Positions 31,199-49,535 of a DNA stretch of 64,000 nt are shown one piece after another (within the stretch, counting starts at the first letter, position 1; every line of letters starts with the position of its first letter). A program made the translations under genes and the position numbers. Location of the stretch: IMG/VR virus record IMGVR_UViG_3300027844_001828, positions 1-64,000 of that record; one strand, given 5' to 3'. The notes beneath the pieces were generated by a model. The model made no database searches. It was not told where the DNA came from and saw nothing but the letters and a program-made list of their open reading frames with translations.

Positions 31199-32752
31199 AT
31201 GATAATAATATACGATAAAAAAAGCAGGGTGATCGTTGAGAGCCTTACCACAAACTCAGAGGGCGAGCTACCCTCTTCAGACTCTTTGTCTAAGATGTAT
31301 CCAAAAAGTTATAAGAGACTTCTTTGCTGTAACATGGAAATCCCGACAAATATAAGTGTTGTTGGAGCGACGATTGAAATAAAATCTGAGATTCCTTTCA
31401 AGATTTTCAAAGACGATTCGATAGTGTTTGAGTTGACTATAAAAGAGTTCGATCAGAAGCTCAAAAACAAGCGAGAAGAAAGAAGAAACAGCATGCTTGT
31501 AAACTTTCCGTGCGTATTCTCCAAGAAAGGAGTGAGCGGATTCACAGATCAACTTTCACGCTTGCCACAAACCTTTGATGAAATTGGGTTGTCGATGCGA
31601 GATGGTAGTTATTTTGAAAAGGGGTTGATGAAGGTTGGTTGGTGGGGAACATTCATGGATGCTGGCGGCTATGCCAACATGAATCGCGAGATAACAAGAA
31701 GGCTACACAACTATAGGATAATCCCCTATGTTAGAACTTACGCGACCGCCTGTCAGATTGACCCACCTGCTGCTGACTTATTCAGGCAATACGAAGATAT
31801 GAAACCTAAAAAGGGCGATCACCCATTTGTATATGCTTACACTCCGATGGCTCACACTTACCATGGCGGTAAGCGTGTCTTTTTTACAATGATGGAGACC
31901 TCATCTTTACACTCTGTGTTTGTAGACCATTGCAATAGGTTTAGTGATGAAGTCTGGGTCCCGTCTGAGGCTAACAAGGAGTTATTCAAATCAGAGGGTG
32001 TAAAAAAGAGAATCAGAGTTGCCCCACTTGGCATTGATGAAATCATATACTTTAAACAAAGTGTTCCGGTTAAGAAAATAAATTCCTACAAGAGTTTGTT
32101 TGGACCAAAGGTGGAAGATGGCGTGAGGGATTTTAAGTTCCTAACACTGATTCAGTGGAACTTTAGGAAAGGCTATGACGCCTTGATAAAAGCCTTCGTT
32201 AATAAGTACACGGCAAAGGATGATGTCTGCTTAGTCTTTGCCACACAATATTCATTTGACACGGTGTACAACGACTTGAAAAGACATTTACCAAGGAATA
32301 GTGATCTTCCACAGGTTGTCCTGTATAATGACATAATCCCGACAGTAGACATGCCGGGGTTCTACAAAAATTTTGATTGTTATATTCATATGTCAAGAGG
32401 TGAAGGTTTTAGCTTGACTCAAATTGAAGCAGCCGCATGTGGGTTGCCAGTAATATCTAATTGTCATTCTGGGATGACTGAGTATCTCACAAAAGAAAAC
32501 AGTTTCATGATCGACTGCAAAGAGGTTGAGAAGTGTTGCCCAGAGCTTGGTAGCGTTTGCTATTTTTACCAAGGTCAGTACTTGTGGAAAGTTGGAAAAA
32601 AACAAATTAACCAGGCTTCAGAATATATGGATTACGTTGTTAATAATTACGGTAATGCGAAGAAGAAAGCGGAAGTGTTCCATGATGACGTAATAAAAAA
32701 TTATACCTGGGAATTAACCGCAGAACGGATAGCATCATTGCTCAAGAGTTAA
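31199..32752 (+). CDS. Glycosyltransferase family 4 (GT-B) with ~140 aa N-terminal extension
   Basis: 'RKGYDALIKAF' and 'SRGEGFSLTQIEAAACGLPVISNCHSGMTEY' are the GT4 signature; 'DEVWVPSEAN...PLGID' also fits. Confidence 0.9.
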   Translation: MIIIYDKKSRVIVESLTTNSEGELPSSDSLSKMYPKSYKRLLCCNMEIPTNISVVGATIEIKSEIPFKIFKDDSIVFELTIKEFDQKLKNKREERRNSMLVNFPCVFSKKGVSGFTDQLSRLPQTFDEIGLSMRDGSYFEKGLMKVGWWGTFMDAGGYANMNREITRRLHNYRIIPYVRTYATACQIDPPAADLFRQYEDMKPKKGDHPFVYAYTPMAHTYHGGKRVFFTMMETSSLHSVFVDHCNRFSDEVWVPSEANKELFKSEGVKKRIRVAPLGIDEIIYFKQSVPVKKINSYKSLFGPKVEDGVRDFKFLTLIQWNFRKGYDALIKAFVNKYTAKDDVCLVFATQYSFDTVYNDLKRHLPRNSDLPQVVLYNDIIPTVDMPGFYKNFDCYIHMSRGEGFSLTQIEAAACGLPVISNCHSGMTEYLTKENSFMIDCKEVEKCCPELGSVCYFYQGQYLWKVGKKQINQASEYMDYVVNNYGNAKKKAEVFHDDVIKNYTWELTAERIASLLKS

Positions 32753-32754
32753 TT

Positions 32755-33396
32755 ATGATTGGACTTGGTTTAATAACTTTGAATGAAGAAGAGTATGTCG
32801 AAAGATGTATCAAGAGCGCCGAGGGGCTCTATGATGAATTAATAGTTCTTGACCACTTCTCTTCAGATAGGACGGCTGAAATATGCGCCGATCTTGGGGC
32901 GCAAGTCGTTCAGGCCAAATGGATTCACGATTTTTCACTCGCCAGGAACCAACTAAATAATTTATTTACCTCTCCATGGATATTTCAGATGGACGCTGAT
33001 GAACATCTTGAGGGGGAAAAGTTAAATTTATTGTCACATGCAGTTGAAATATCAGAAAACCAGGGTATAGTAGCATGGTCCTTGTTAAGGAAGAACCATT
33101 ATCCTGATCATGATGCAGGATCTCCGTTTTTTGCGGCTCCGTTTTACCCGGACCCGCAAGTGAGACTGTTCAAAAACCAACCTGAGATATATTGGAGTGG
33201 AGCAGTTCACGAAGGAGTTTCTCAGGCGATTACAGAAGGGAATATTGGAACAATAGGACGCCTTTCTGTTTGTCTTCACCATCACATGTTCCGAGGAAAC
33301 CAAGAAAAATACGAAGACTTAAAAGGACAATATTACAGTAACATTCAACAAGGAGTTTTCCATGAAGATGGCCACCCGACTAATAAAGTCAACTGA
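32755..33396 (+). CDS. Glycosyltransferase family 2 (GT-A; WaaE/SunS/flagellin-GT-like catalytic domain)
   Basis: 'LITLNEEEYVERCIKS...ELIVLDHFSSDRT', 'DFSLARN', DxD motif 'MDADE', 'VRLFKN...WSGAVHE'. Confidence 0.9.
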   Translation: MIGLGLITLNEEEYVERCIKSAEGLYDELIVLDHFSSDRTAEICADLGAQVVQAKWIHDFSLARNQLNNLFTSPWIFQMDADEHLEGEKLNLLSHAVEISENQGIVAWSLLRKNHYPDHDAGSPFFAAPFYPDPQVRLFKNQPEIYWSGAVHEGVSQAITEGNIGTIGRLSVCLHHHMFRGNQEKYEDLKGQYYSNIQQGVFHEDGHPTNKVN

Positions 33397-35644
33397 ATTA
33401 GAATTTCTCAATGCCTACAAGCATGAATTGTACTCAAAGGGCTCTGACATTTCAAAGTCCTGGAAGGTAGGCGAGAACCTCGTTTTTGTCGTTGGAGACG
33501 AAATCGCTGGTTTTGCTAACGTTCTTGGAAGGTCTTATCATAGCGATGAGGAATTGTGGCCCGGAGTGACGAAGCCGTTCAGGTTGCCTATAGATTTTAT
33601 AAGGGTTTTCCCCGTTGGTGATAGACCGACATTCTCAGGGTCGGTCCACAAAAATATGCTTATAGAAATATATGGTAAGAATAATTGGGGCCATGTTTTT
33701 GTAAACAAGCACTCTCTCCCAGACCATGTCAGCAAGAGCCTTCTCACCGAGTTGAAAGGGCTCAGAAACATGAGCGAAAAAGTAGACTTCTCATTGGACA
33801 TCTCAATCTCCAATGAGATAAAATCTATCACTGAGAAAATTCAGAGAAAGGCCAAACAAAGTATGAACCAAGACAAAGTTGACTATGAAGAGAAAAGGGA
33901 GACGCTTGTTTTCCGAATGCTTGAATTTGTAAGAAACGATCCAGAAAGGTTGGAGAAGCTTAAACATAAATCTTTCCTTAAGTCACTCGACGAGTCGGAA
34001 AACAATTACTTCAGAGAAGTCAAATACGCTGACGTAAAACATGATGTTAAAGAATTAATGTCAATTCAGGGATTATTCAGACCCAAGTGGAAAGAGTATG
34101 GCCCAGGAACATACGTAGTTGTTGGCGACTCTCATGGTGATCATGCGGAAGCTGGGGTGTTCTCTCTTGTCCAATCATTAAGCGAATACATCGGTGCCGA
34201 TAATGTATTCCATATTGGACATATATTGGATGATAATGAAATAATCAACGAAGACTTGGTGAGAATAAAAGACCTTGTTGTTATTTCAAGGGTGGAAGAG
34301 TCGCCACAGATTGAAGAGTTTTATGAAGACAACTCAACCGGTGACACCGAGCCATTTGAAATTATTCAAGAGGGCGTTTTACTTGGTAATGTAAAGGTCG
34401 CTAATCACGATCTTTCAAACGACTATATGAGTACGAGAGCGGATAGCAAAACAGTAAATAGGAAGGTATTTGAAGAGTCTTCTATTTTGAGCGGGCACAG
34501 ACATGAAATATCCAATACTGCCACAAATGATGATCAGAGAGTCGTCTCTGGATTTCCAGGATGCTTGTGTGAAAATCACGTTTCATCAAATTCGAGAAAG
34601 CCAAGATACAGACAAGACATTCTCGAAAAGTTCTTGAAAAAGAACCCGTGGCATTTGAAAGCCAATAGAAGAAGGATTACGATCAAGGAAGAGTGGGAAC
34701 AGGGCGTTTTTGTTGTCAATGTAAGCGCGGACTATTCACATACGATTGTTCCATGCCGAATCAAAAAAGTAATGATTGAAGGAAGAGAAAGATTTGCCAC
34801 GAGTTACTTCGACAAGATCATTTCTGAAAACGCAGTTCATGAGCCAGACAAAAAGATTTTCGTCAATGGTGATGTTCACGCTCCGCTTCAAGACTCGCAG
34901 GTTCTCCACATTCAGGACCAAGTAGTGAAGGACTACCAACCAGATATTTATGTCAACATCGGAGACATAAGAAGCAGCGAGGGGTTGAATCATCATATCC
35001 TTGATCGTGGAGAGATTCCTAATGAGACCCTCATTGAAGAATCCACTTGCGTCTATCATCTTCTTAAAATGATGTCTGAATGGGCACCTGAAAAGCATGT
35101 CTTGTTTGGAAATCATGAAAGATTCGCTTGTGACTTTATAAAGAAGAACCCTCAATTCGAAGGGCTCATTGATTTCAACTTTATGTGTGGAGTAGAAAGA
35201 CTTGGGTATAATCTTGTTCCGCATCAAGGAACTCTTGAGATTGATGACGTTGTATTCGTCCATGGAGATATCTTGAGAGGTGGAGCGGCAGCGATGGATA
35301 AGTACGCTTCTGCGTTCCCCGACAAGACGGTCGTTTTGGGCCACAGTCACTATCCTGCAATAAGGTCTGAAGTGTACATGATGGGTCTCACCGGATTGAG
35401 AGATCAGGGATACAATGAGAAATCAATAACGAGATGGTGCCATGGATTAGGTTTTGTAAATACCTTCAATGGGGTATCCTGGGCCACATCCATAGCTATT
35501 GAAAGACATTCGATAAGCATAAATGGGAAAAAATATTCCTCAGACGACGATGGTTTTTGGAGGACTTATCGGTATAAAACAGAATTAGTTTATATACCAG
35601 AAGACCCCGAAAGCGAGTTAGATGATGAATTGGCACTTGAATGA
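33362..35644 (+). CDS. EVE/PUA-like domain fused to two calcineurin-like metallophosphoesterase domains
   Basis: N-terminus 'WKVGENLVFVV..EIAGFANVLGRSYHSDEELWP...PFRLPIDF' is EVE-like. MPE1 has GDSHG / GHILDD / NHD / GHRH. MPE2 has GDVH / GDI / GNHE / HGD / GHSH. Confidence 0.7.
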   Translation: MKMATRLIKSTELEFLNAYKHELYSKGSDISKSWKVGENLVFVVGDEIAGFANVLGRSYHSDEELWPGVTKPFRLPIDFIRVFPVGDRPTFSGSVHKNMLIEIYGKNNWGHVFVNKHSLPDHVSKSLLTELKGLRNMSEKVDFSLDISISNEIKSITEKIQRKAKQSMNQDKVDYEEKRETLVFRMLEFVRNDPERLEKLKHKSFLKSLDESENNYFREVKYADVKHDVKELMSIQGLFRPKWKEYGPGTYVVVGDSHGDHAEAGVFSLVQSLSEYIGADNVFHIGHILDDNEIINEDLVRIKDLVVISRVEESPQIEEFYEDNSTGDTEPFEIIQEGVLLGNVKVANHDLSNDYMSTRADSKTVNRKVFEESSILSGHRHEISNTATNDDQRVVSGFPGCLCENHVSSNSRKPRYRQDILEKFLKKNPWHLKANRRRITIKEEWEQGVFVVNVSADYSHTIVPCRIKKVMIEGRERFATSYFDKIISENAVHEPDKKIFVNGDVHAPLQDSQVLHIQDQVVKDYQPDIYVNIGDIRSSEGLNHHILDRGEIPNETLIEESTCVYHLLKMMSEWAPEKHVLFGNHERFACDFIKKNPQFEGLIDFNFMCGVERLGYNLVPHQGTLEIDDVVFVHGDILRGGAAAMDKYASAFPDKTVVLGHSHYPAIRSEVYMMGLTGLRDQGYNEKSITRWCHGLGFVNTFNGVSWATSIAIERHSISINGKKYSSDDDGFWRTYRYKTELVYIPEDPESELDDELALE

Positions 35645-37733
35645 AGTATTTGGGCAGCAGCCACATAAAGATACTTCAACAATTAATTTTTACTTATTTT
35701 TATCAAATGGGGAGTATTGGGTTGAGACAATCGACACCAATTACCCCATGGGATATATAGAAAGTGAATTCACCAAACAGTTAATCAGCATGAACACCGC
35801 TGAGTACGGAACAGACCAGTCCGTATTGACCATTTTGCGTAAGAGATTGACCCCAACTTCCGCCTTGCATCTAATATTTGACCGAGATAAGGCTGATTTA
35901 TACCTCTCAGAAGACAATAAGCAGCTTCTGAAGGCAAATCGTGGCGAAGACGGGTATCGAATCGCAACCTTAGCCTTGAAGGCGCTCGGTGGCTGGCTGG
36001 TAAGTGATGATCAACCTAAGACCAACTTATTTGGTGAATTAGATAAAAGTTCACTGTCCCTCGTCTCAAACAATAAGTTCTGGATAAATAAAAATTTCTC
36101 CATATATTCACTTATGGATTTTCCAGCAATAATTTCGTCCTTAGAGAATTCTGGTAAAGAGTGGAAAGGGATGGAGACAGCGAGTATTTTCATCTTTGAT
36201 TACAATGATGAGCAGATACGGGAAGTTATGGAGAAGCAAATAGGGAACGGGTTTCTTGATAGAGATGCTAGCCTGTGCTTGCTAAACTTCAATATCGGGA
36301 GATTTGAGGTCCAGTCGCCATCTATTATTGTTGACTCGAATGAAAAGGGAATCTTTGAGATTCAAAACGCTATAAAAGACGTATTGTTGAAAAAGATTGG
36401 TGTTACGGGACTACCATTAATGAAGGCGAGATCTGAGGCCGCTTTTAATAGCGGGTACAGTGTTCAGGATATTTACTATACGTCTTTCAAAGACGCGGAG
36501 CATGATCAGGCCATATCTAACGCATTCAATAGCGGCCCTAACAAAGAAGCCAAGGCTAAGATGGCAAAAATATTCAAGGATTATAAAATTTTCCTTGGTG
36601 ACACTGAGATGAGAAACTTCTTATTGAGCTTTTTTATTTTCAAAGAGATATTCCCATTGTCAGACGCCGCAAAACAATACAAGACTTTTTTCACTATTAT
36701 CGGAATGGCAAAACCACCCGGAGCGCCGGGGAGAAATCCCTCAGTAAACAACCAGGAAGTATTTGACGCTATCTTCACTGCCGTTGGAGACCCCGTTGTC
36801 GGAGAAGACAAATTATATTACCTTATATCTTCAAGGTTTTGTTTCCCAAAGAGGGTGTTTTCTTTATTTTTCAATGTGAACGATTCCTCTGATGCCACAA
36901 TGCATGATGTGATCGAGTTCAATCAGAAGAATGGGATGGTATCTGGGTACAGTTTGACCGAGGGCGAGTCTGATACGACTCAAGATGAAAAAGCGTTTTA
37001 CAACCTTAAAGTAGCGCCACATATGCAGAAAGCTGTTATTGCCAAACTTGGAGATAAGGTCAGAGACAATCGGGTGGATGAAAAAGTAATGATTAAAAGC
37101 TTGTCTGAATTTCCAGATGCGCATTCTCAGATCTTACAGTCTTTTGAATCCTACGGAGTTGAGTATCAAGACATTAATGTTATCATGACATTTTCCCCCG
37201 GCGAGGCAGGGCAGGTAGCTGGTTATGCCAGTAACACATTCAATGATCAGGAAGCGGTGTCTCTGGCTCGGGGGCACAGGGACTTTAAGATGCCATTTAT
37301 CATTATGAACACTGCATCGCCGCAGGTTTCAAATAGAGAGAAGATGACATCAATATTGATTCATGAGGCGGATCACTACTTGCATGATATGCTAATACTA
37401 AAAGGAGAACTTGATAAATCGTTTAACGACATCAAGGGCGGCAGCGATGCAAAAACGCACAAGGAGCAAATCCAAAACCATCTTGAGTATTTGAGATCAC
37501 CATCTGAGACGGAGGCCCACACGGTTGAGGCGCTATCCGTTCTTCGAGCATTCTCTGTCCCGTACCTTATCAAAAACTGGCATACAATAAAAAGTAAGAT
37601 TATAGCAGAGGAATTTGAAGTCAAAGGAGAGCTTGCCTACCAAGTAGTCATCAAAGAATATTCTGGTTTCGTCGAAGAGGCGCTAAGAAGATATATTAAA
37701 GAAGTTGAAGTCTCAAATCCCCCACCTGAGTAA
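35622..37733 (+). CDS. Large protein (703 aa) with C-terminal HExxH zincin-like metallopeptidase motif
   Basis: 'ILIHEADHYLH' followed by 'YLRSPSETEAH', a downstream Glu-ligand pattern. The N-terminal ~500 aa are unrecognised. Confidence 0.55.
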   Translation: MMNWHLNEVFGQQPHKDTSTINFYLFLSNGEYWVETIDTNYPMGYIESEFTKQLISMNTAEYGTDQSVLTILRKRLTPTSALHLIFDRDKADLYLSEDNKQLLKANRGEDGYRIATLALKALGGWLVSDDQPKTNLFGELDKSSLSLVSNNKFWINKNFSIYSLMDFPAIISSLENSGKEWKGMETASIFIFDYNDEQIREVMEKQIGNGFLDRDASLCLLNFNIGRFEVQSPSIIVDSNEKGIFEIQNAIKDVLLKKIGVTGLPLMKARSEAAFNSGYSVQDIYYTSFKDAEHDQAISNAFNSGPNKEAKAKMAKIFKDYKIFLGDTEMRNFLLSFFIFKEIFPLSDAAKQYKTFFTIIGMAKPPGAPGRNPSVNNQEVFDAIFTAVGDPVVGEDKLYYLISSRFCFPKRVFSLFFNVNDSSDATMHDVIEFNQKNGMVSGYSLTEGESDTTQDEKAFYNLKVAPHMQKAVIAKLGDKVRDNRVDEKVMIKSLSEFPDAHSQILQSFESYGVEYQDINVIMTFSPGEAGQVAGYASNTFNDQEAVSLARGHRDFKMPFIIMNTASPQVSNREKMTSILIHEADHYLHDMLILKGELDKSFNDIKGGSDAKTHKEQIQNHLEYLRSPSETEAHTVEALSVLRAFSVPYLIKNWHTIKSKIIAEEFEVKGELAYQVVIKEYSGFVEEALRRYIKEVEVSNPPPE

Positions 37734-47090: not shown

Positions 47091-47343
47091 ATTCGAAGGA
47101 ATAGAAGTGATAGATGATGGCCCGGATGTTTATTCCAGGAGTAAGGACGGTAGAATCATGTTTAGATTTAATAGAATAGACGGGACGTTTGCCCTGTTCA
47201 GATCTACAAGAATCAGCGATGCAGAAAAAGAGTTCACGTTGATAATGTTTGATAAGTTGAGCAATGATATGACCGAGACGAGTAGAGAAGATGTAAAATG
47301 TGCATTAGAGTATAAACTTGAAAAGGACCTATTTTGCACATGA
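47080..47343 (+). CDS. Hypothetical protein
   Basis: GGAG SD upstream of ATG 47080; its stop overlaps the next ATG (ATGA). Confidence 0.55.
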   Translation: MENRFEGIEVIDDGPDVYSRSKDGRIMFRFNRIDGTFALFRSTRISDAEKEFTLIMFDKLSNDMTETSREDVKCALEYKLEKDLFCT

Positions 47344-49535
47344 GTAATGCAGAGCATAAAAACATATTACCATTTAGCATTTTCAAAACCATCCTCATTG
47401 TAGAGAAGAGGGCTCTTGATGAAGGGATATCATTAGTGGACTCTTGTTTTTTCGCAAGCTGTATGATGAGTGCGAACAAGATGCATTTCCACCCCACCTT
47501 TGACGATAAAGAGATGGGCAAGTTCTGCGCCTTCATAGATGAAAACTGTCTTGTTAGATCGAAAAAGAAGACTTTTAATATAGATGACATCAAGTTCGCG
47601 AAACCAGTAATCGACTGTGTTGTGAAAGCGAAGGTCGAACCCAACAATGTTGATGCATGTCACGTCTTTTATCTTTTGATGAAATCAGATAGGAAGTTGA
47701 ATTCAATCGCTGCGCAACACAATATAACCACGAATAAGATTCTTGAGGTTGTAAATAGGATTGGCTCAAGTAAAATTGAGAATGATAAAAAGGTTACGGG
47801 TAAAAACAAGAAGCCCGCCAAGAGTGTCGCAAGTGGAAAAGAAGATTTGATTTTCAAATACTGCATAGATTTTAATGAGAAAGCAGCCAAGGGCGAATTG
47901 TCACCAGTGTTTTGTAGGGATGATGAAATTGAGAAGGTGATCGTCTCCTTGATGAAAAAGAACAAAGCTAATCCATTGTTGATTGGTGAGCCGGGAGTCG
48001 GTAAGACAGCCATTGTTGAGGGTATAGCGCAAAAGTTCGCTGCCGGGGATGTGCCTAAGAGATTCAAAGGGTATAAGATTCTTGGATTAAGTATGTCATC
48101 GATCATTCAAGGGACAACCTTGAGAGGGCAGTTTGAAGAACGCCTCGAAGCCATAATGAAAAAGATAATCGAAACTGGCAATATCATTTTGTTCATTGAT
48201 GAGATCCACACAATGGTGGGTGCGGGAAACGACTCTAATGGATTGGATGCGGGAAATATTATGAAGCCGTATCTTGCCAGAGGTGAATTTAGATGCATCG
48301 GAGCGACAACGTTTGACGATTATTATAAGTACATGAAAAAAGACAAGGCTCTTTCGAGAAGGTTCCAGAGAATTTTTGTTTCAGAACCCAGTAAAGAAGA
48401 GACGATTGAAATAATTAGGGGGTTAGCACCAGGTCTTGAGACCTATCACGGTTGCGTCATTGACTCATCGTCTTTTGAAAAATCTGTTGATTTATGCCAA
48501 AGATTTATCAATGACAGGTTTTTTCCAGACAAGGCTATAGATTGTCTTGATCACGCTTGTGCAAAGTCATCATTAGACTTGAGTGTTGTCGGAGACGATA
48601 TTATTGAGGAAGTTATTAGCGACTTCTGTGACATCCCCGTCTCTTTAATCAGAACGAAAGAGTCTGTGAGGCTTGAGAAGCTTGAGGGCGCTATTGGGAG
48701 TGAGATATTTGGAAATGAAAATAGTATCAAAGAATTTTGCAATAGAATAAGATTCGCTTGCTCAACGAGGAAGTCTTCGAGTGGGCCGTTATGTTCTTTT
48801 GTGTTTTATGGCCCTCCGGGGATTGGTAAAAAATCTATTATCGGGATAACAGCGAGGCATCTGTATGGTGATCAATCCGTAATAGTAATAAATGGATCGG
48901 AATACTCAGAGAGCAATGCGATAAATAGAATAATTGGCTCTCCGCCTGGATATATCGGTTACGATGAGGAAGGGTATATTTTAAGAGAGGTGAGACGCAA
49001 GCCCCATACGATGATTTTAATTAAGAAGCAAGATCTAATGCATGCTACAGTGAAAGAGCAGTTTAAGCAGATAATAGAGCGTGGTGTGGTAACTGATGTT
49101 CATGGGATGATAGCGGACTTCTCAAATTGCGTTATCGCCTTCTCGGTGGACACCAGCAACAAAAGTAGTTTGGGATTTACTCAGGGAGGGAACAGCGTCA
49201 GTGGCGATGCGGAATGCGAGACAATAAAAAAGAATTGCCCATTATTATCCCGCGTGTCTCACCACATATCTTTCAACGACACACCATCCGAGTACGTGTC
49301 GAGTCTCGTATCAGTCGAAATGGAAAAATTCCATGACGAGTTGAAATTCAGCGAAATCCGTGTACATTATGATTCTAAGTGTATCAAGTATTTCGAATCC
49401 TTGAAGGGCTCTCCTTCATCTATTCGATCCGAAGTAAGAAACAAGCTCGAATACGAATTATGTAATGGGCTATCCTCAGACAATCGAGAGTACTGGTTTG
49501 AAGTAGTCGATGATGAAATAACAGTTAGGAGGTAA
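47340..49535 (+). CDS. clpA: ClpA/ClpC-family AAA+ chaperone; NBD1 intact, NBD2 degenerate
   Basis: NBD1 has 'GEPGVGKT', 'FIDEIH', 'CIGATT' and 'ALSRRFQ'. NBD2 has 'GPPGIGKK', pore loop 'GSPPGYIGY', Walker B replaced by 'LIKKQD', and an 'LGF' loop. There is no middle coiled-coil domain. Confidence 0.85.
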   Translation: MSNAEHKNILPFSIFKTILIVEKRALDEGISLVDSCFFASCMMSANKMHFHPTFDDKEMGKFCAFIDENCLVRSKKKTFNIDDIKFAKPVIDCVVKAKVEPNNVDACHVFYLLMKSDRKLNSIAAQHNITTNKILEVVNRIGSSKIENDKKVTGKNKKPAKSVASGKEDLIFKYCIDFNEKAAKGELSPVFCRDDEIEKVIVSLMKKNKANPLLIGEPGVGKTAIVEGIAQKFAAGDVPKRFKGYKILGLSMSSIIQGTTLRGQFEERLEAIMKKIIETGNIILFIDEIHTMVGAGNDSNGLDAGNIMKPYLARGEFRCIGATTFDDYYKYMKKDKALSRRFQRIFVSEPSKEETIEIIRGLAPGLETYHGCVIDSSSFEKSVDLCQRFINDRFFPDKAIDCLDHACAKSSLDLSVVGDDIIEEVISDFCDIPVSLIRTKESVRLEKLEGAIGSEIFGNENSIKEFCNRIRFACSTRKSSSGPLCSFVFYGPPGIGKKSIIGITARHLYGDQSVIVINGSEYSESNAINRIIGSPPGYIGYDEEGYILREVRRKPHTMILIKKQDLMHATVKEQFKQIIERGVVTDVHGMIADFSNCVIAFSVDTSNKSSLGFTQGGNSVSGDAECETIKKNCPLLSRVSHHISFNDTPSEYVSSLVSVEMEKFHDELKFSEIRVHYDSKCIKYFESLKGSPSSIRSEVRNKLEYELCNGLSSDNREYWFEVVDDEITVRR

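What the first reader, a model, noticed from the sequence alone, without database searches (positions are those of the whole stretch)
33362..35644. EVE-like modified-base reader fused to tandem metallophosphoesterases
Seen: an N-terminal ~130 aa EVE/PUA-like segment, a helical linker, a partly degenerate MPE (GDSH, GH for GD, no GNHE, GHRH; ~34120-34510) and an intact MPE (GDVH, GD, GNHE, HGD, GHSH; ~34865-35350). Known: EVE domains bind modified bases such as 5mC/5hmC and are usually fused to nucleases in modification-dependent restriction. Calcineurin-like MPEs include Mre11/SbcD nucleases and cyclic-nucleotide phosphodiesterases. Inference: a phage enzyme that recognises modified nucleic acid, for example methylated host DNA or tRNA, and cleaves it, or an anti-defence phosphodiesterase. 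I do not know of this architecture being described.
Basis: partly seen in the sequence, partly recalled or inferred. Interest (0 to 1): 0.7.

Follow-up and report, generated by a model that had tools for sequence, protein, structure and literature searches.

The report
Modified-base reader fused to T5-A1-like nuclease
A 235-kb phage encodes a protein that joins an EVE-type modified-base reader, of the kind bacteria use in methylation-dependent restriction, to a double phosphoesterase core distantly related to phage T5's host-DNA-destroying protein A1, which suggests (untested) how such a nuclease could tell host DNA from phage DNA.

Summary
ORF 33362-35644 (+, 760 aa) has an EVE/YTH-type fold at residues 1-135 (Z 12.8-13.5; profile hit to PH1033, E 0.0013), a helical linker, a rewired metallophosphoesterase (MPE) fold at 241-470 (Z 12.5; motifs II, III and VI changed) and an intact MPE at 490-735 (PF00149, all motifs).

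- The double-MPE core is a distant relative of phage T5 A1 (phrog_1745; hhalign 93%, E 3.6e-7). A 2026 preprint reports A1 as necessary and sufficient for host chromosome degradation.
Its other partners are restriction modules: NmeDI_C, McrB, Mrr, an OLD-like ATPase, and neighbouring C5-methyltransferases plus HNH.

Sister proteins carry Myb, HTH or Zn-ribbon N-termini instead, so the N-terminus is a swappable nucleic-acid-binding module.

Best reading (confidence about 0.4): an A1-like DNA nuclease directed or licensed by a modified base. The ligand, the substrate, and whether the target is host, competitor or phage DNA are all untested.

The architecture is not wholly undescribed: bacterial PUA-Calcineurin (PUA-Cal/MisA) defence proteins exist. 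This phage protein differs from them in having a tandem core, no HAD partner and a phage setting. I rate it a new variant of known kinds.

The parts
33362..35644 (+). Whole ORF, 760 aa (P0001). The start overlaps the end of the upstream GT2 gene by 35 nt, and the stop overlaps the start of the downstream gene by 23 nt.
   Evidence: homologues; single copy in the 235.6-kb genome.
33362..33766 (+). Residues 1-135: EVE/YTH-type PUA-like reader module. The family's near-invariant positions R6, W34, W66, R74, F79, R88 and G110 are all kept. Relative to the family consensus, the query has Y24 for W and K71 for Y.
   Evidence: Fold: Z 13.5 (YTH 7nh2), 12.8-13.4 (PH1033 1wmm), 11.6 (VcaM4I). Profile A3 against PDB sequences: PH1033 E 0.0013. 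Family of at least 192 clusters. Conservation.
33767..34081 (+). Residues 136-240: a low-confidence segment followed by a helical linker. The part from about residue 172 is shared by all family members (R191 and F205 invariant).
   Evidence: AF2 secondary structure and pLDDT; alignment A1.
34082..34771 (+). Residues 241-470: MPE-fold domain 1 with a rewired site. Motif I is kept (D256, H258). Motif II GD becomes GH (H287). Motif III GNHE becomes S-[R/K]-x-E-E (R310, E312, E313). Motif V GH is kept (H379, plus E382). Motif VI GHxH becomes G-C-x-C-E-x-H (C401, C403, E404, H406).
   Evidence: Z 12.5 to MJ0936 over residues 249-467; no PF00149 hit; invariant columns; hhalign against domain 2 aligns only motifs I-II, with H287 opposite D535; reciprocal HMM cross-hits on motifs I-II. 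The assignment of motifs III-VI is my inference from the order of secondary-structure elements.
34829..35566 (+). Residues 490-735: catalytically intact MPE domain 2, with D504/H506, G534-D535, G583-N584-H585-E586, H634, and G660-H661-x-H663. It also has motifs shared with T5 A1: N543-H544-H545 and the GHxH...GYNE...W block (Y684-N685-E686, W692).
   Evidence: PF00149 at 33.5 bits; phrog_221 E 2.7e-20 and phrog_1745 E 5.3e-6; Z 12-14 to DP1, SbcD, Mre11, YfcE and LpxH; hhalign of the family against T5 A1 at 93%, E 3.6e-7.
35567..35641 (+). Residues 736-760: a low-confidence, acidic C-terminal tail (…PEDPESELDDELALE) that is specific to this protein.
35622..37733 (+). Downstream gene, 703 aa, unannotated, with a conserved HExxH-like motif. 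It is a conserved neighbour in the close relative, so it is a possible partner, but this is unproven.
   Evidence: no family hit; E 4e-37 to the neighbour of P0007; a gene of about 700 aa at the same position.
31199..33396 (+). Upstream GT4 (31199-32752) and GT2 (32755-33396) glycosyltransferase genes. They abut or overlap the ORF and are probably co-transcribed. This is context, not shown to be functionally linked.
   Evidence: same gene order in L003.

Best explanation
The gene encodes a phage enzyme with three parts.

(1) Residues 1-135 form an EVE/YTH-type PUA-like pocket domain. It belongs to a family whose other members serve as the specificity module of modification-dependent restriction enzymes.

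(2) Residues 241-735 form a double metallophosphoesterase core homologous to phage T5 A1. The second copy has a complete binuclear-metal active site and is the catalytic unit. The first copy keeps the fold but has a rewired, strongly conserved His/Asp/Cys/Glu constellation. It probably acts as a non-canonical partner, an intramolecular pseudo-dimer that helps hold the substrate. That is inferred.

(3) A helical linker joins the two.

Most likely mechanism (inferred): the N-terminal module binds a modified base in DNA, probably a methylated cytosine and less surely a methylated adenine. This recruits or licenses the A1-like core to hydrolyse phosphodiester bonds in that DNA. The enzyme would degrade host (or competitor) DNA during takeover while sparing phage DNA that lacks the mark.

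The N-terminus is therefore an exchangeable nucleic-acid-targeting head on a constant catalytic body.

Shown here: Inferred: DNA as the substrate, nuclease chemistry, dependence on modification, and the identity of the target.
For: Reader module:
- Fold matches at Z 12.8-13.5 to YTH domains and PH1033/EVE, and Z 11.6 to residues 1-152 of VcaM4I.
- Profile hit to PH1033 at E 0.0013.
- All near-invariant family positions are kept in the fused proteins.
- Other architectures in the family: AAA_5 + McrB_lid (P0072), Mrr_cat (P0092), an OLD-like AAA_15/21 ATPase (P0122), NmeDI_C (P0021; 22 clusters share that C-terminal domain), and a stand-alone copy next to two C5-MTases plus HNH_2 in an integrase-flanked island.

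Core and T5 A1:
- T5 A1 is phrog_1745 (E 8.5e-244). P0001, P0009 and P0013 hit phrog_1745 at 5e-6, 2e-7 and 3.6e-13.
- hhalign of the family against T5 A1 gives 93%, E 3.6e-7 over 234 columns, including the NHH and GHxH...GYN...W motifs.
- The domain-2 HMM hits only the A1 gene in the T5 genome, E 2e-6.
- tblastn of P0013 hits 560 phage records, and the listed ones are mostly annotated 'A1 protein' or 'DNA transfer protein'.
- The ESM Atlas 'A1 protein' cluster aligns over 434 residues, TM 0.51/0.68.
- A1 is reported as necessary and sufficient for host chromosome degradation (bioRxiv 10.64898/2026.04.02.716235).

Swappable head:
- Myb, HTH and Zn-ribbon N-termini in P0008-17, L015 and L017.
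- The EVE-bearing proteins sit on one side of a 100/99 branch and are retained across deep divergence.

Roles already filled by other genes:
- The phage has its own fused SbcD-SbcC and a DnaE-type polymerase, so this is neither the recombination nuclease nor a polymerase subunit.

Genome features:
- The phage genome avoids many 6-bp restriction palindromes.
- No C5-MTase or hydroxymethylase was found, so a 5mC-type mark would not be made by the phage itself.
Against: - No biochemical data exist for this family. Even for T5 A1, nuclease activity of the purified protein has not been shown; the preprint states that A1 might instead activate a host nuclease.
- Homology to A1 is demonstrable by sequence only for domain 2. 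Domain 1 against the N-terminal half of A1 gives nothing.
- Host methyltransferases would also methylate replicating phage DNA, which weakens a simple host-versus-phage discrimination model.
- GATC and CCWGG are not avoided in the phage genome.
- The gene sits in an operon with glycosyltransferases, not in an obvious early or host-takeover module.
Confidence: 0.4

Rival explanations
1. A nucleotide-directed enzyme gated by a modified mononucleotide, following PUA-Cal/MisA logic. The EVE-like pocket binds a free modified nucleotide such as m6-dAMP or 5m-dCMP, and the MPE hydrolyses nucleotides, NAD+ or signalling nucleotides. The phage would use this either to reshape nucleotide pools or as a counter-defence that removes the methylated-mononucleotide alarm sensed by Metis/PUA-Cal-HAD.
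For: [quoted passage not shown] Domain 2 matches compact phosphodiesterases (YfcE, MJ0936, ApaH-type, LpxH) about as well as it matches nucleases. A conserved arginine on strand 1 (R6) resembles the phosphate-binding arginines R8/R10 of PUA-Cal, though that comparison is by position only.
Against: The closest characterised relative of the core is T5 A1, which is linked to chromosome degradation. There is no HAD partner anywhere in the genome. The core is tandem, not a single Cal domain. There is no PADLOC hit, although the 2023 library predates Metis.
Confidence: 0.17
2. A self-directed DNA-processing enzyme. The reader recognises the phage's own methyl mark (m6A or m4C, written by its N6/N4 methyltransferase). 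It either brings the A1-like core to phage DNA for replication, recombination or end processing, or holds it inactive on marked (self) DNA.
For: The phage encodes an N6_N4 methyltransferase (E 4e-44). The fold is as close to YTH m6A readers as to EVE. The gene lies just upstream of the helicase/DnaB replication block, and this synteny is conserved. T5 A1 itself has a second role in phage DNA handling, second-step transfer together with the DNA-binding protein A2 (bioRxiv 10.1101/866236).
Against: Synteny is expected among related phages and does not prove a functional link.
Confidence: 0.15
3. An RNA-directed enzyme. The YTH/EVE-like head reads a modified RNA base (in tRNA, rRNA or mRNA), and the MPE cleaves the RNA or heals its ends (2',3'-cyclic phosphodiesterase/phosphatase, as in the MPE domain of bacterial Pnkp).
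For: YTH domains are the best fold matches and are RNA m6A readers. Some EVE domains are proposed to read 5mC in tRNA (PMC7641849). The existence of MPE-type RNA end-healing enzymes is from my own knowledge, not from a tool.
Against: There are no tRNA genes in the window, and no RNA ligase or kinase partner was noticed nearby. Ectopic T5 A1 expression left rRNA intact while degrading the chromosome (bioRxiv 10.64898/2026.04.02.716235). The Myb/HTH heads in sister proteins point to DNA.
Confidence: 0.08
4. A mainly non-catalytic takeover factor. Like the other reported activities of T5 A1 (RNA-polymerase binding, shut-off), the protein might act as a DNA-bound regulator or scaffold, with the MPE site being secondary.
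For: A1 is pleiotropic and is reported to bind RNA polymerase. Domain 1 looks like a pseudo-enzyme. The helical linker is conserved (R191, F205).
Against: All metal-binding and catalytic residues of domain 2 are invariant across 17 sequences that share only 30-50% identity. That degree of conservation argues for catalysis.
Confidence: 0.05

Closest known systems
Phage T5 A1 protein (phrog_1745, annotated 'A1' or 'DNA transfer protein'; Demerecviridae)
   Same: The C-terminal MPE is homologous, including family-specific motifs beyond the generic MPE signature: NHH after motif II and GHxH...G.Y..G.(T/S)G..D.GYN...W (hhalign 93%, E 3.6e-7). The predicted structures align over 434 residues spanning both halves. 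Both are phage proteins of about 550-760 aa with a degenerate domain in front of the catalytic MPE.
   Different: T5 A1 has no EVE-like head. Its DNA-binding partner A2 is a separate protein. In T5 A1 the region in front of the catalytic MPE has lost even motif I ('SIQN' by my reading), whereas here D256, H258, H287, H379, C401 and C403 are conserved. A1 is a pre-early gene in the terminal repeat, whereas this gene follows two glycosyltransferase genes, 33 kb into a 235-kb genome. Identity in the aligned part is only about 21%.
PUA-Cal (PUA-Cal-HAD) and MisA (type I Metis) bacterial anti-phage proteins
   Same: The order of modules is the same: an N-terminal PUA-clan pocket domain followed by a calcineurin-like metallophosphoesterase. 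The pocket domain's family is also found fused to McrB and HNH effectors.
   Different: PUA-Cal has one Cal domain (549 aa), an obligatory HAD partner, a bacterial defence context, a mononucleotide ligand (m6-dAMP) and nucleotide/NAD+ substrates. This protein has a tandem MPE core related to T5 A1, no HAD in the genome and a phage context. I could not test sequence relatedness to MisA/PUA-Cal because no sequence was available to the tools.
Modification-dependent (type IV) restriction enzymes with PUA-superfamily readers (for example the VcaM4I class, EVE/YTH-McrB)
   Same: Reader-plus-effector logic. The same reader family is fused to McrB-, Mrr- and NmeDI_C-type modules elsewhere.
   Different: The effector is an MPE, not an HNH, PD-(D/E)XK or PLD nuclease or McrBC. 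The gene is phage-encoded rather than cellular. EVE-MPE is absent from the 2020 census of EVE architectures ('calcineurin' and 'metallophosph' each occur 0 times in PMC7641849).
PH1033 / UPF0310 (the archetypal EVE-domain structure, PDB 1wmm/2hd9)
   Same: Best sequence-profile hit in the PDB (E 0.0013), with shared WG, GD and YPYR motifs. Z 12.8-13.4 over about 124 residues.
   Different: P0001 does not reach the Pfam PF01878 model. Only 2 of 55 family members hit it, weakly. YTH domains match the fold equally well.
Mre11/SbcD and the PolD DP1 exonuclease
   Same: Domain 2 has the same MPE fold and a full motif set, with Z 11-14.
   Different: There is no capping domain or Rad50/SbcC partner, and the phage has a separate fused SbcD-SbcC. 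The replicase is DnaE-type, not PolD.

Membership tests
EVE domain (Pfam PF01878; PUA-like clan) | PUA-like beta-barrel fold superimposable on PH1033 and other EVE structures | tested here: met
   Z 12.8-13.4, rmsd 2.4-2.7 Å over 122-125 residues to 1wmm/2hd9; Z 11.6 to VcaM4I residues 1-152. YTH domains score equally well (Z 13.5).
EVE domain (Pfam PF01878; PUA-like clan) | Significant match to the curated Pfam EVE model | tested here: not met
   No PF01878 hit for P0001 or its six close relatives, even at E up to 10. Only 2 of 55 members of the wider family hit it (best E 0.0018). I therefore file it as EVE-like (PUA-like clan), not as a PF01878 member.
EVE domain (Pfam PF01878; PUA-like clan) | Profile-level sequence relationship to UPF0310/EVE proteins | tested here: met
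   The 55-sequence profile finds PH1033 as the top PDB sequence (E 0.0013) and MJECL36 second (E 0.07), with aligned WG / GD / YPYR motifs. This is marginal but specific.
EVE domain (Pfam PF01878; PUA-like clan) | Binds a modified base in a conserved aromatic pocket | not testable with these tools
   Conserved aromatic and basic positions exist (R6, W/Y24, W34, W66, Y/F73, R74).
Calcineurin-like metallophosphoesterase (PF00149) | Domain 2: motifs DxH, GD, GNH[DE], H, GH and GHxH, and a Pfam score above the cut-off | tested here: met
   33.5 bits against a cut-off of 21.5. D504, H506, D535, N584, H585, H634 and H663 are invariant and H661 is at least 90% conserved.
Calcineurin-like metallophosphoesterase (PF00149) | Domain 1: the same motifs | tested here: not met
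   The fold is present (Z 12.5 to MJ0936). There is no PF00149 hit. GD becomes GH, GNHE becomes S-[R/K]-x-E-E, and GHxH becomes G-C-x-C. It has the MPE fold but not a canonical MPE site.
Phage T5 A1 family (phrog_1745) | Sequence-profile match to the family | tested here: inconclusive
   P0001 matches only a 62-residue stretch (E 5.3e-6); P0013 matches at 3.6e-13. The family profile against T5 A1 gives 93%, E 3.6e-7 over 234 columns. The best PHROG for these proteins is phrog_221 (generic MPE), not 1745. This makes it a distant relative, not a member of the PHROG.
Phage T5 A1 family (phrog_1745) | Same overall architecture (a degenerate domain in front of the catalytic MPE) | tested here: inconclusive
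   The ESM Atlas structure search aligns 434 residues (query 58-720) to the 'A1 protein' cluster, TM 0.51/0.68. By sequence, domain 1 against the N-terminal half of A1 gives nothing (E 0.48).
Phage T5 A1 family (phrog_1745) | Pre-early gene in the first-step-transfer terminal repeat, acting with the DNA-binding protein A2 | tested here: not met
   The gene lies 33 kb into the record, after two glycosyltransferase genes. IMG/VR found no end repeats on the record. Here a nucleic-acid-binding module is fused in cis instead.
Phage T5 A1 family (phrog_1745) | Causes degradation of host chromosomal DNA | not testable with these tools
   This needs expression or infection experiments.
PUA-Cal-HAD / type I Metis (MisA-MisB) | N-terminal PUA-like domain followed by a single Calcineurin-CE domain | tested here: not met
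   The PUA-like head is present, but it is followed by a linker and two MPE-fold domains, whereas PUA-Cal is 1-185 plus 186-549.
PUA-Cal-HAD / type I Metis (MisA-MisB) | Adjacent HAD phosphatase partner | tested here: not met
   No PF13419 match anywhere in the 235.6-kb genome. The neighbours are glycosyltransferases and an unannotated 703-aa protein.
PUA-Cal-HAD / type I Metis (MisA-MisB) | Sequence homology to MisA/PUA-Cal | not tested
   No MisA or PUA-Cal sequence was available through the tools. PADLOC 2.0.0 (2023) predates these systems and gave no hit.
Type IV (modification-dependent) restriction endonucleases | A modified-base reader domain joined to a DNA-cleaving effector | tested here: inconclusive
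The effector is an MPE whose DNase activity is inferred only from its homology to A1.
Mre11/SbcD recombination nuclease | MPE plus capping domain, acting with a Rad50/SbcC ATPase | tested here: not met
   There is no capping domain after residue 735. The neighbouring genes are not ABC ATPases. The phage has a separate fused SbcD-SbcC of 1192 aa.

The most novel reading that the evidence does not exclude
The A1-type host-genome-degrading enzymes of phages form a broad superfamily with a constant double-MPE body and exchangeable targeting heads: EVE-like reader, Myb, HTH, Zn-ribbon, and in T5 perhaps the separate A2 protein. In this jumbo-phage clade, the head is a restriction-type modified-base reader, which would make the enzyme a phage-encoded, methylation-dependent 'reverse restriction' nuclease. 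It would recognise host (or rival-phage) DNA by its epigenetic mark and destroy it, while the phage's differently marked DNA is spared. That would give a concrete, testable answer to the open question of how A1-like nucleases tell host DNA from phage DNA.
Probability: 0.25. Interest if true: 0.8.

Novelty: new variant of a known kind. Interest (0 to 1): 0.62.

Why it matters
Three reasons.

1. It extends the T5 A1 family. The 2026 A1 preprint describes that family as predominantly associated with Demerecviridae. Here it reaches huge environmental phages, and it turns out to be modular: a conserved double-phosphoesterase body carrying different nucleic-acid-binding heads.

2. How A1 degrades host DNA while sparing unmodified T5 DNA is stated to be unresolved in that preprint. 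A natural fusion of an A1-like body to a modified-base reader makes 'discrimination by epigenetic mark' directly testable in a related enzyme.

3. It shows a restriction-type reader module, shared with McrB, Mrr and NmeDI_C fusions, recruited by a phage. This fits the pattern of conflict-system domains moving between hosts and viruses. It also complements the recent discovery that bacteria use PUA-calcineurin fusions to sense methylated nucleotides.

The strongly conserved but non-canonical site of domain 1 (His for Asp, Arg/Lys for Asn, Cys-x-Cys for His-x-His) is also an unexplored variation of the metallophosphoesterase fold.

Tried and rejected
Led nowhere:
- tblastn of P0001 against 50,697 phage genomes gave no match at 1e-5. 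The link to A1 appeared only with the family member P0013 and with profiles.
- Pfam, NCBIfam and PADLOC gave nothing for the N-terminus, domain 1 or the downstream gene.
- PDB sequence searches with the 7-sequence head profile, the domain-1 profile and the domain-2 profile gave only chance hits.
- hhalign of domain 1 against the N-terminal half of T5 A1 gave no signal.
- Complex prediction of domain 1 with Zn, meant to test whether the rewired site still binds metal, was not folded by the tool and gives no evidence.
- The promoter/terminator scan was uninformative.

Considered and rejected:
- It is the phage's Mre11/SbcD. Rejected: a fused SbcD-SbcC exists elsewhere in the genome.
- It is a PolD-DP1-like polymerase subunit (DP1 was the top fold hit). 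Rejected: the replicase is DnaE-type, no PolB or PolA was found, and DP1's Z score is barely above that of other MPEs.
- It is a PUA-Cal-HAD/Metis member. Rejected: tandem core, no HAD, phage context.
No thymidylate-synthase-type hydroxymethylase, DpdA, Dam or Dcm was found, and strong avoidance of restriction sites suggests ordinary DNA. An N6/N4 methyltransferase does exist, so a self-mark is kept as a rival.
- The phage avoids a methylation motif that would betray the enzyme's target. GATC and CCWGG are not avoided, so this test was uninformative.
- The antisense ORF 34736-35350 (204 aa) is a mechanical ORF inside a conserved gene and was disregarded.

Full report
**1. The observation**

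The window is the first 64 kb of a 235.6-kb IMG/VR virus record estimated to be 93% complete, so this is a jumbo phage. Almost all of its genes are on the + strand. ORF 33362..35644 (+) encodes 760 aa. It overlaps the upstream GT2 glycosyltransferase gene by 35 nt and the downstream gene by 23 nt, and it occurs once in the genome.

The protein has 16 homologues (E 1e-86 to 1e-244) among 5.8 billion proteins, all from metagenomes, and three more in the 1.84-billion representative set. It is a real, conserved gene.

**2. The N-terminal module (residues 1-135)**

Sequence searches with the single protein or its six close relatives found nothing. AlphaFold2 models of the whole protein (pLDDT 79) and of residues 1-150 (pLDDT 77) give a beta-rich domain. 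That domain superimposes on:
- YTH m6A-reader domains (Z 13.5);
- PH1033, the archetypal EVE structure (Z 12.8-13.4, rmsd about 2.5 Å);
- MJECL36 (Z 12.5);
- ASCH (Z 11.1);
- residues 1-152 of the restriction endonuclease VcaM4I (Z 11.6).

Each match covers 120-136 of about 135 residues.

A profile search of 1.84 billion representatives found at least 192 clusters carrying this module, most of them stand-alone proteins of 130-170 aa. A 55-sequence profile then found PH1033 as the top PDB sequence (E 0.0013), with aligned WG, GD and YPYR motifs. MJECL36 and a YTH domain came next.

P0001 does not reach Pfam's EVE model, and only 2 of 55 family members do so weakly. The correct label is therefore 'EVE-like, PUA-like clan'. 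Bell et al. (PMC7641849) note that many prokaryotic YTH-like domains cannot be separated cleanly from EVE.

The family's near-invariant residues (R6, W34, W66, R74, F79, R88, G110) are all kept in the phage proteins. The query has Y for the consensus W at position 24 and K for the consensus Y at position 71.

**3.

Its other architectures are:
- AAA_5 + McrB_lid, followed by an overlapping downstream gene (P0072);
- Mrr_cat + Mrr_N (P0092);
- an OLD/AbiEii-type ABC ATPase (P0122);
- an HTH (P0155);
- a class of about 360 aa, comprising 22 clusters, whose shared C-terminal domain is NmeDI_C, a restriction-endonuclease domain (also row 10).

A stand-alone member sits directly after two C5-cytosine methyltransferases and an HNH_2 endonuclease in an integrase-flanked island.

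This is the signature of a specificity module of modification-dependent restriction. It gives a weak hint, not more, that the ligand class is methylated cytosine.

**4. The two phosphoesterase domains**

Domain 2 (residues 490-735) is a bona fide calcineurin-like MPE. It scores 33.5 bits on PF00149 and E 2.7e-20 on phrog_221. All metal and catalytic residues are invariant across sequences only 30-50% identical. Fold matches are Z 11-14 to PolD DP1, SbcD/Mre11, YfcE, Vps29 and LpxH.

Domain 1 (residues 241-470) has the MPE fold (Z 12.5 to MJ0936 over residues 249-467) but is invisible to PF00149. Profile-profile comparison with domain 2 aligns only motifs I-II and places H287 opposite the bridging D535 (E 0.002). 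The two HMMs cross-hit each other in the same region, which is consistent with an old internal duplication.

Reading the remaining motifs from the order of secondary-structure elements (my inference):
- GNHE has become S-[R/K]-x-E-E;
- GHxH has become G-C-x-C-E-x-H;
- motif I (D256, H258) and the motif V His (H379) are kept.

All of these positions are invariant or nearly so. Domain 1 is therefore not decaying. It is a conserved, non-canonical site, possibly mononuclear, and I could not test that.

**5. The core is related to phage T5 A1**

The weak phrog_1745 hit ('DNA transfer protein') turned out to be the key lead.
- T5 A1 itself scores E 8.5e-244 on phrog_1745. Family members P0013 and P0009 score 3.6e-13 and 2e-7.
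- The family alignment aligns to T5 A1 with 93% probability (E 3.6e-7) over 234 columns (our residues 445-693 against A1 residues 249-532). The alignment includes motifs that are not part of the generic MPE signature: NHH after motif II and GHxH...G.Y..G.(T/S)G..D.GYN...W.
- In the entire T5 genome, the domain-2 HMM hits only A1, once in each terminal repeat.
- tblastn of P0013 against 50,697 phage genomes hits 560 records. The listed ones are overwhelmingly annotated 'A1 protein' or 'DNA transfer protein' in T5-like phages.
- The ESM Atlas structure search aligns 434 residues (query 58-720) to the 'A1 protein' cluster (TM 0.51/0.68). It also finds further virus clusters of 499-724 aa with the same double core and HTH_8, HTH_23, HNH_repeat or Myb heads. 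BFVD and AlphaFold DB give similar double-core proteins, for example in Pseudomonas phage pf16.

By sequence, domain 1 is not detectably related to the N-terminal half of A1. In T5 that region has lost even motif I (my reading).

According to a 2026 preprint (10.64898/2026.04.02.716235):
- A1 is a predicted metallophosphatase that is essential for infection.
- It is necessary and sufficient for host chromosome degradation in vivo.
- It leaves rRNA intact.
- It appears predominantly associated with Demerecviridae.
- Nuclease activity of purified A1 has not yet been shown.
- How unmodified T5 DNA escapes A1 is unresolved.

**6. The head is exchangeable**

Ten proteins carry the EVE-like head (P0001-7, P0018, P0023, P0028). 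Twelve relatives with the same linker and double core carry two Myb/SANT-like repeats, a single HTH or a Zn-ribbon instead. Some of these are in phage contigs of 296-476 kb.

In a maximum-likelihood tree of the core, the EVE-bearing proteins occupy one side of a 100/99-supported branch, with terminal branches up to about 1 substitution per site. This fits one acquisition that has been retained for a long time.

Gene order is conserved in a close relative and a distant one: sugar or glycosyltransferase genes, this gene, a gene of about 700 aa, a ResIII helicase, then DnaB/primase. These phages are syntenic overall, so this is weak evidence for a functional link.

**7. Genome context relevant to function**

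The phage has:
- its own fused SbcD-SbcC of 1192 aa;
- a DnaE-type polymerase, with no PolA or PolB found;
- a third small MPE next to an HD hydrolase;
- one N6/N4 DNA methyltransferase.

It has no Dam, Dcm, thymidylate-synthase-type hydroxymethylase, DpdA or HAD.

Its genome contains no GGATCC, GGCGCC, CGATCG or GTCGAC sites (28-36 expected of each), but it does not avoid GATC or CCWGG. The DNA therefore looks like ordinary, restriction-exposed DNA, perhaps carrying m6A or m4C.

**8. Interpretation**

The best-supported reading is an A1-like DNA phosphodiesterase whose exchangeable head brings it to nucleic acid. In this clade the head is a restriction-type modified-base reader, so the enzyme would act on, or be licensed by, DNA carrying a particular mark. 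The most economical target is host or rival DNA during takeover.

I put this at about 0.4 because none of the following is shown: catalysis, DNA as the substrate, the identity of the ligand, or the identity of the target.

The main rivals are:
- **A nucleotide-directed enzyme gated by a modified mononucleotide.** The PUA-Cal-HAD and Metis preprints (10.64898/2026.01.15.699771 and 10.1101/2025.11.05.686725) show that this logic exists for a PUA-like + calcineurin fusion in bacteria.
- **A self-directed enzyme** that reads the phage's own methyl mark.
- **An RNA-directed enzyme.**
- **A mainly non-catalytic takeover factor.**

The Myb, HTH and Zn-ribbon heads of sister proteins and the relation to A1 favour DNA polymers over mononucleotides or RNA.

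**9. Comparison with known systems and novelty**

- **T5 A1 family.** The protein works like, and is distantly homologous to, T5 A1. It fails membership of that PHROG: its best PHROG is the generic phrog_221, its genomic setting differs, and its head is fused in cis.
- **Type IV restriction enzymes.** It has the same reader-plus-effector logic, but with an MPE effector in a phage.
- **PUA-Cal/MisA.** It shares the module order but not the defining features (a single Cal domain, a HAD partner, a defence island).

PUA-like + calcineurin fusions are described. An EVE-like head on an A1-like double MPE is not: the words are absent from the 2020 EVE census, and I found no paper describing it.

I rate it a new variant of known kinds. 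Interest is moderately high, because it turns an open question about A1-type host-genome destruction into a direct experiment.

Noticed in passing
window 35622-37733 (+): An unannotated 703-aa protein overlaps the end of the MPE gene by 23 nt and has no hit in Pfam, PHROGs, NCBIfam or PADLOC. It is homologous to the 693-aa neighbour of P0007 (23% identity, E 4e-37), with a conserved HExxH-like motif (LIHEADHYLHD / LMHETRHYIDD). A 709-aa protein sits in the same position in the distant relative L002 but is not BLAST-similar. It may be a partner or an independent conserved gene.
   Followed up: partly
window 31199-33396 (+): GT4 and GT2 glycosyltransferase genes lie immediately upstream and are probably in the same operon. 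The GT4 also matches PF20706 'GT4 in conflict systems' (E 3e-9). The distant relative L002 has a large sugar-nucleotide / sulfotransferase / sialyltransferase-like cluster at the equivalent place. The target of the glycosylation (virion, host surface or DNA) is unknown.
   Followed up: partly
whole genome G000 (window = bases 1-64000): Four 6-bp palindromes are completely absent: GGATCC, GGCGCC, CGATCG and GTCGAC (0 observed, 28-36 expected). TCCGGA and GACGTC are strongly depleted and CTAG has O/E 0.11. GATC and CCWGG are not avoided. This suggests heavy selection by type II restriction systems of the unknown host.
   Followed up: no
G000:C1:78338-81916 (outside the window): A single 1192-aa ORF combines an SbcD-like MPE nuclease (N-terminal, phrog_100) with an SbcC/Rad50-like ATPase (phrog_77). 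This is a fused Mre11-Rad50-type protein.
   Followed up: partly
G000:C1:68243-71887 (L027/L028, outside the window): The only recognisable replicative polymerase is a DnaE/PolIII-alpha type enzyme in a 1084-aa open frame. No family A or family B polymerase was found.
   Followed up: no
G000:C1:191964-193381 and G000:C1:150161-150808 (outside the window): A third small MPE (309 aa, phrog_1649) is directly followed by an HD-domain phosphohydrolase (163 aa). Separately, there is a 248-aa open frame with an N6/N4 DNA methyltransferase match (PF01555, E 4e-44).
   Followed up: no
L021:2781-6462 and L022 (JGI metagenome contigs): A stand-alone member of the EVE-like family (P0019, 153 aa) lies after a weak HhH-GPD glycosylase-like gene, two C5 DNA methyltransferases and an HNH_2 endonuclease, and is flanked by integrases. 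This looks like a mobile 5mC-related R-M or defence island with an apparently uncharacterised reader component.
   Followed up: partly
P0021 and 21 further clusters: A family of proteins of about 250-420 aa combines the same EVE-like head with an NmeDI_C-type C-terminal domain. They are found in bacterial contigs near transposases and are candidate modification-dependent restriction endonucleases.
   Followed up: partly
window 1066-31184 (+): There is a run of very large ORFs (1306, 942, 1396, 1183, 2334 and 2759 aa) on the + strand upstream of the glycosyltransferases. They are presumably structural or fibre proteins and were not analysed.
   Followed up: no
window 47334-49535 (+): A 733-aa protein matches phrog_4871, 'ATP-dependent protease' (E 1.9e-141), and lies within the replication-gene region.
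   Followed up: no
window 34736-35350 (-): A 204-aa antisense ORF (GTG start) lies entirely inside the conserved domain-2 coding region. It is most likely a mechanical ORF, not a gene.
   Followed up: no
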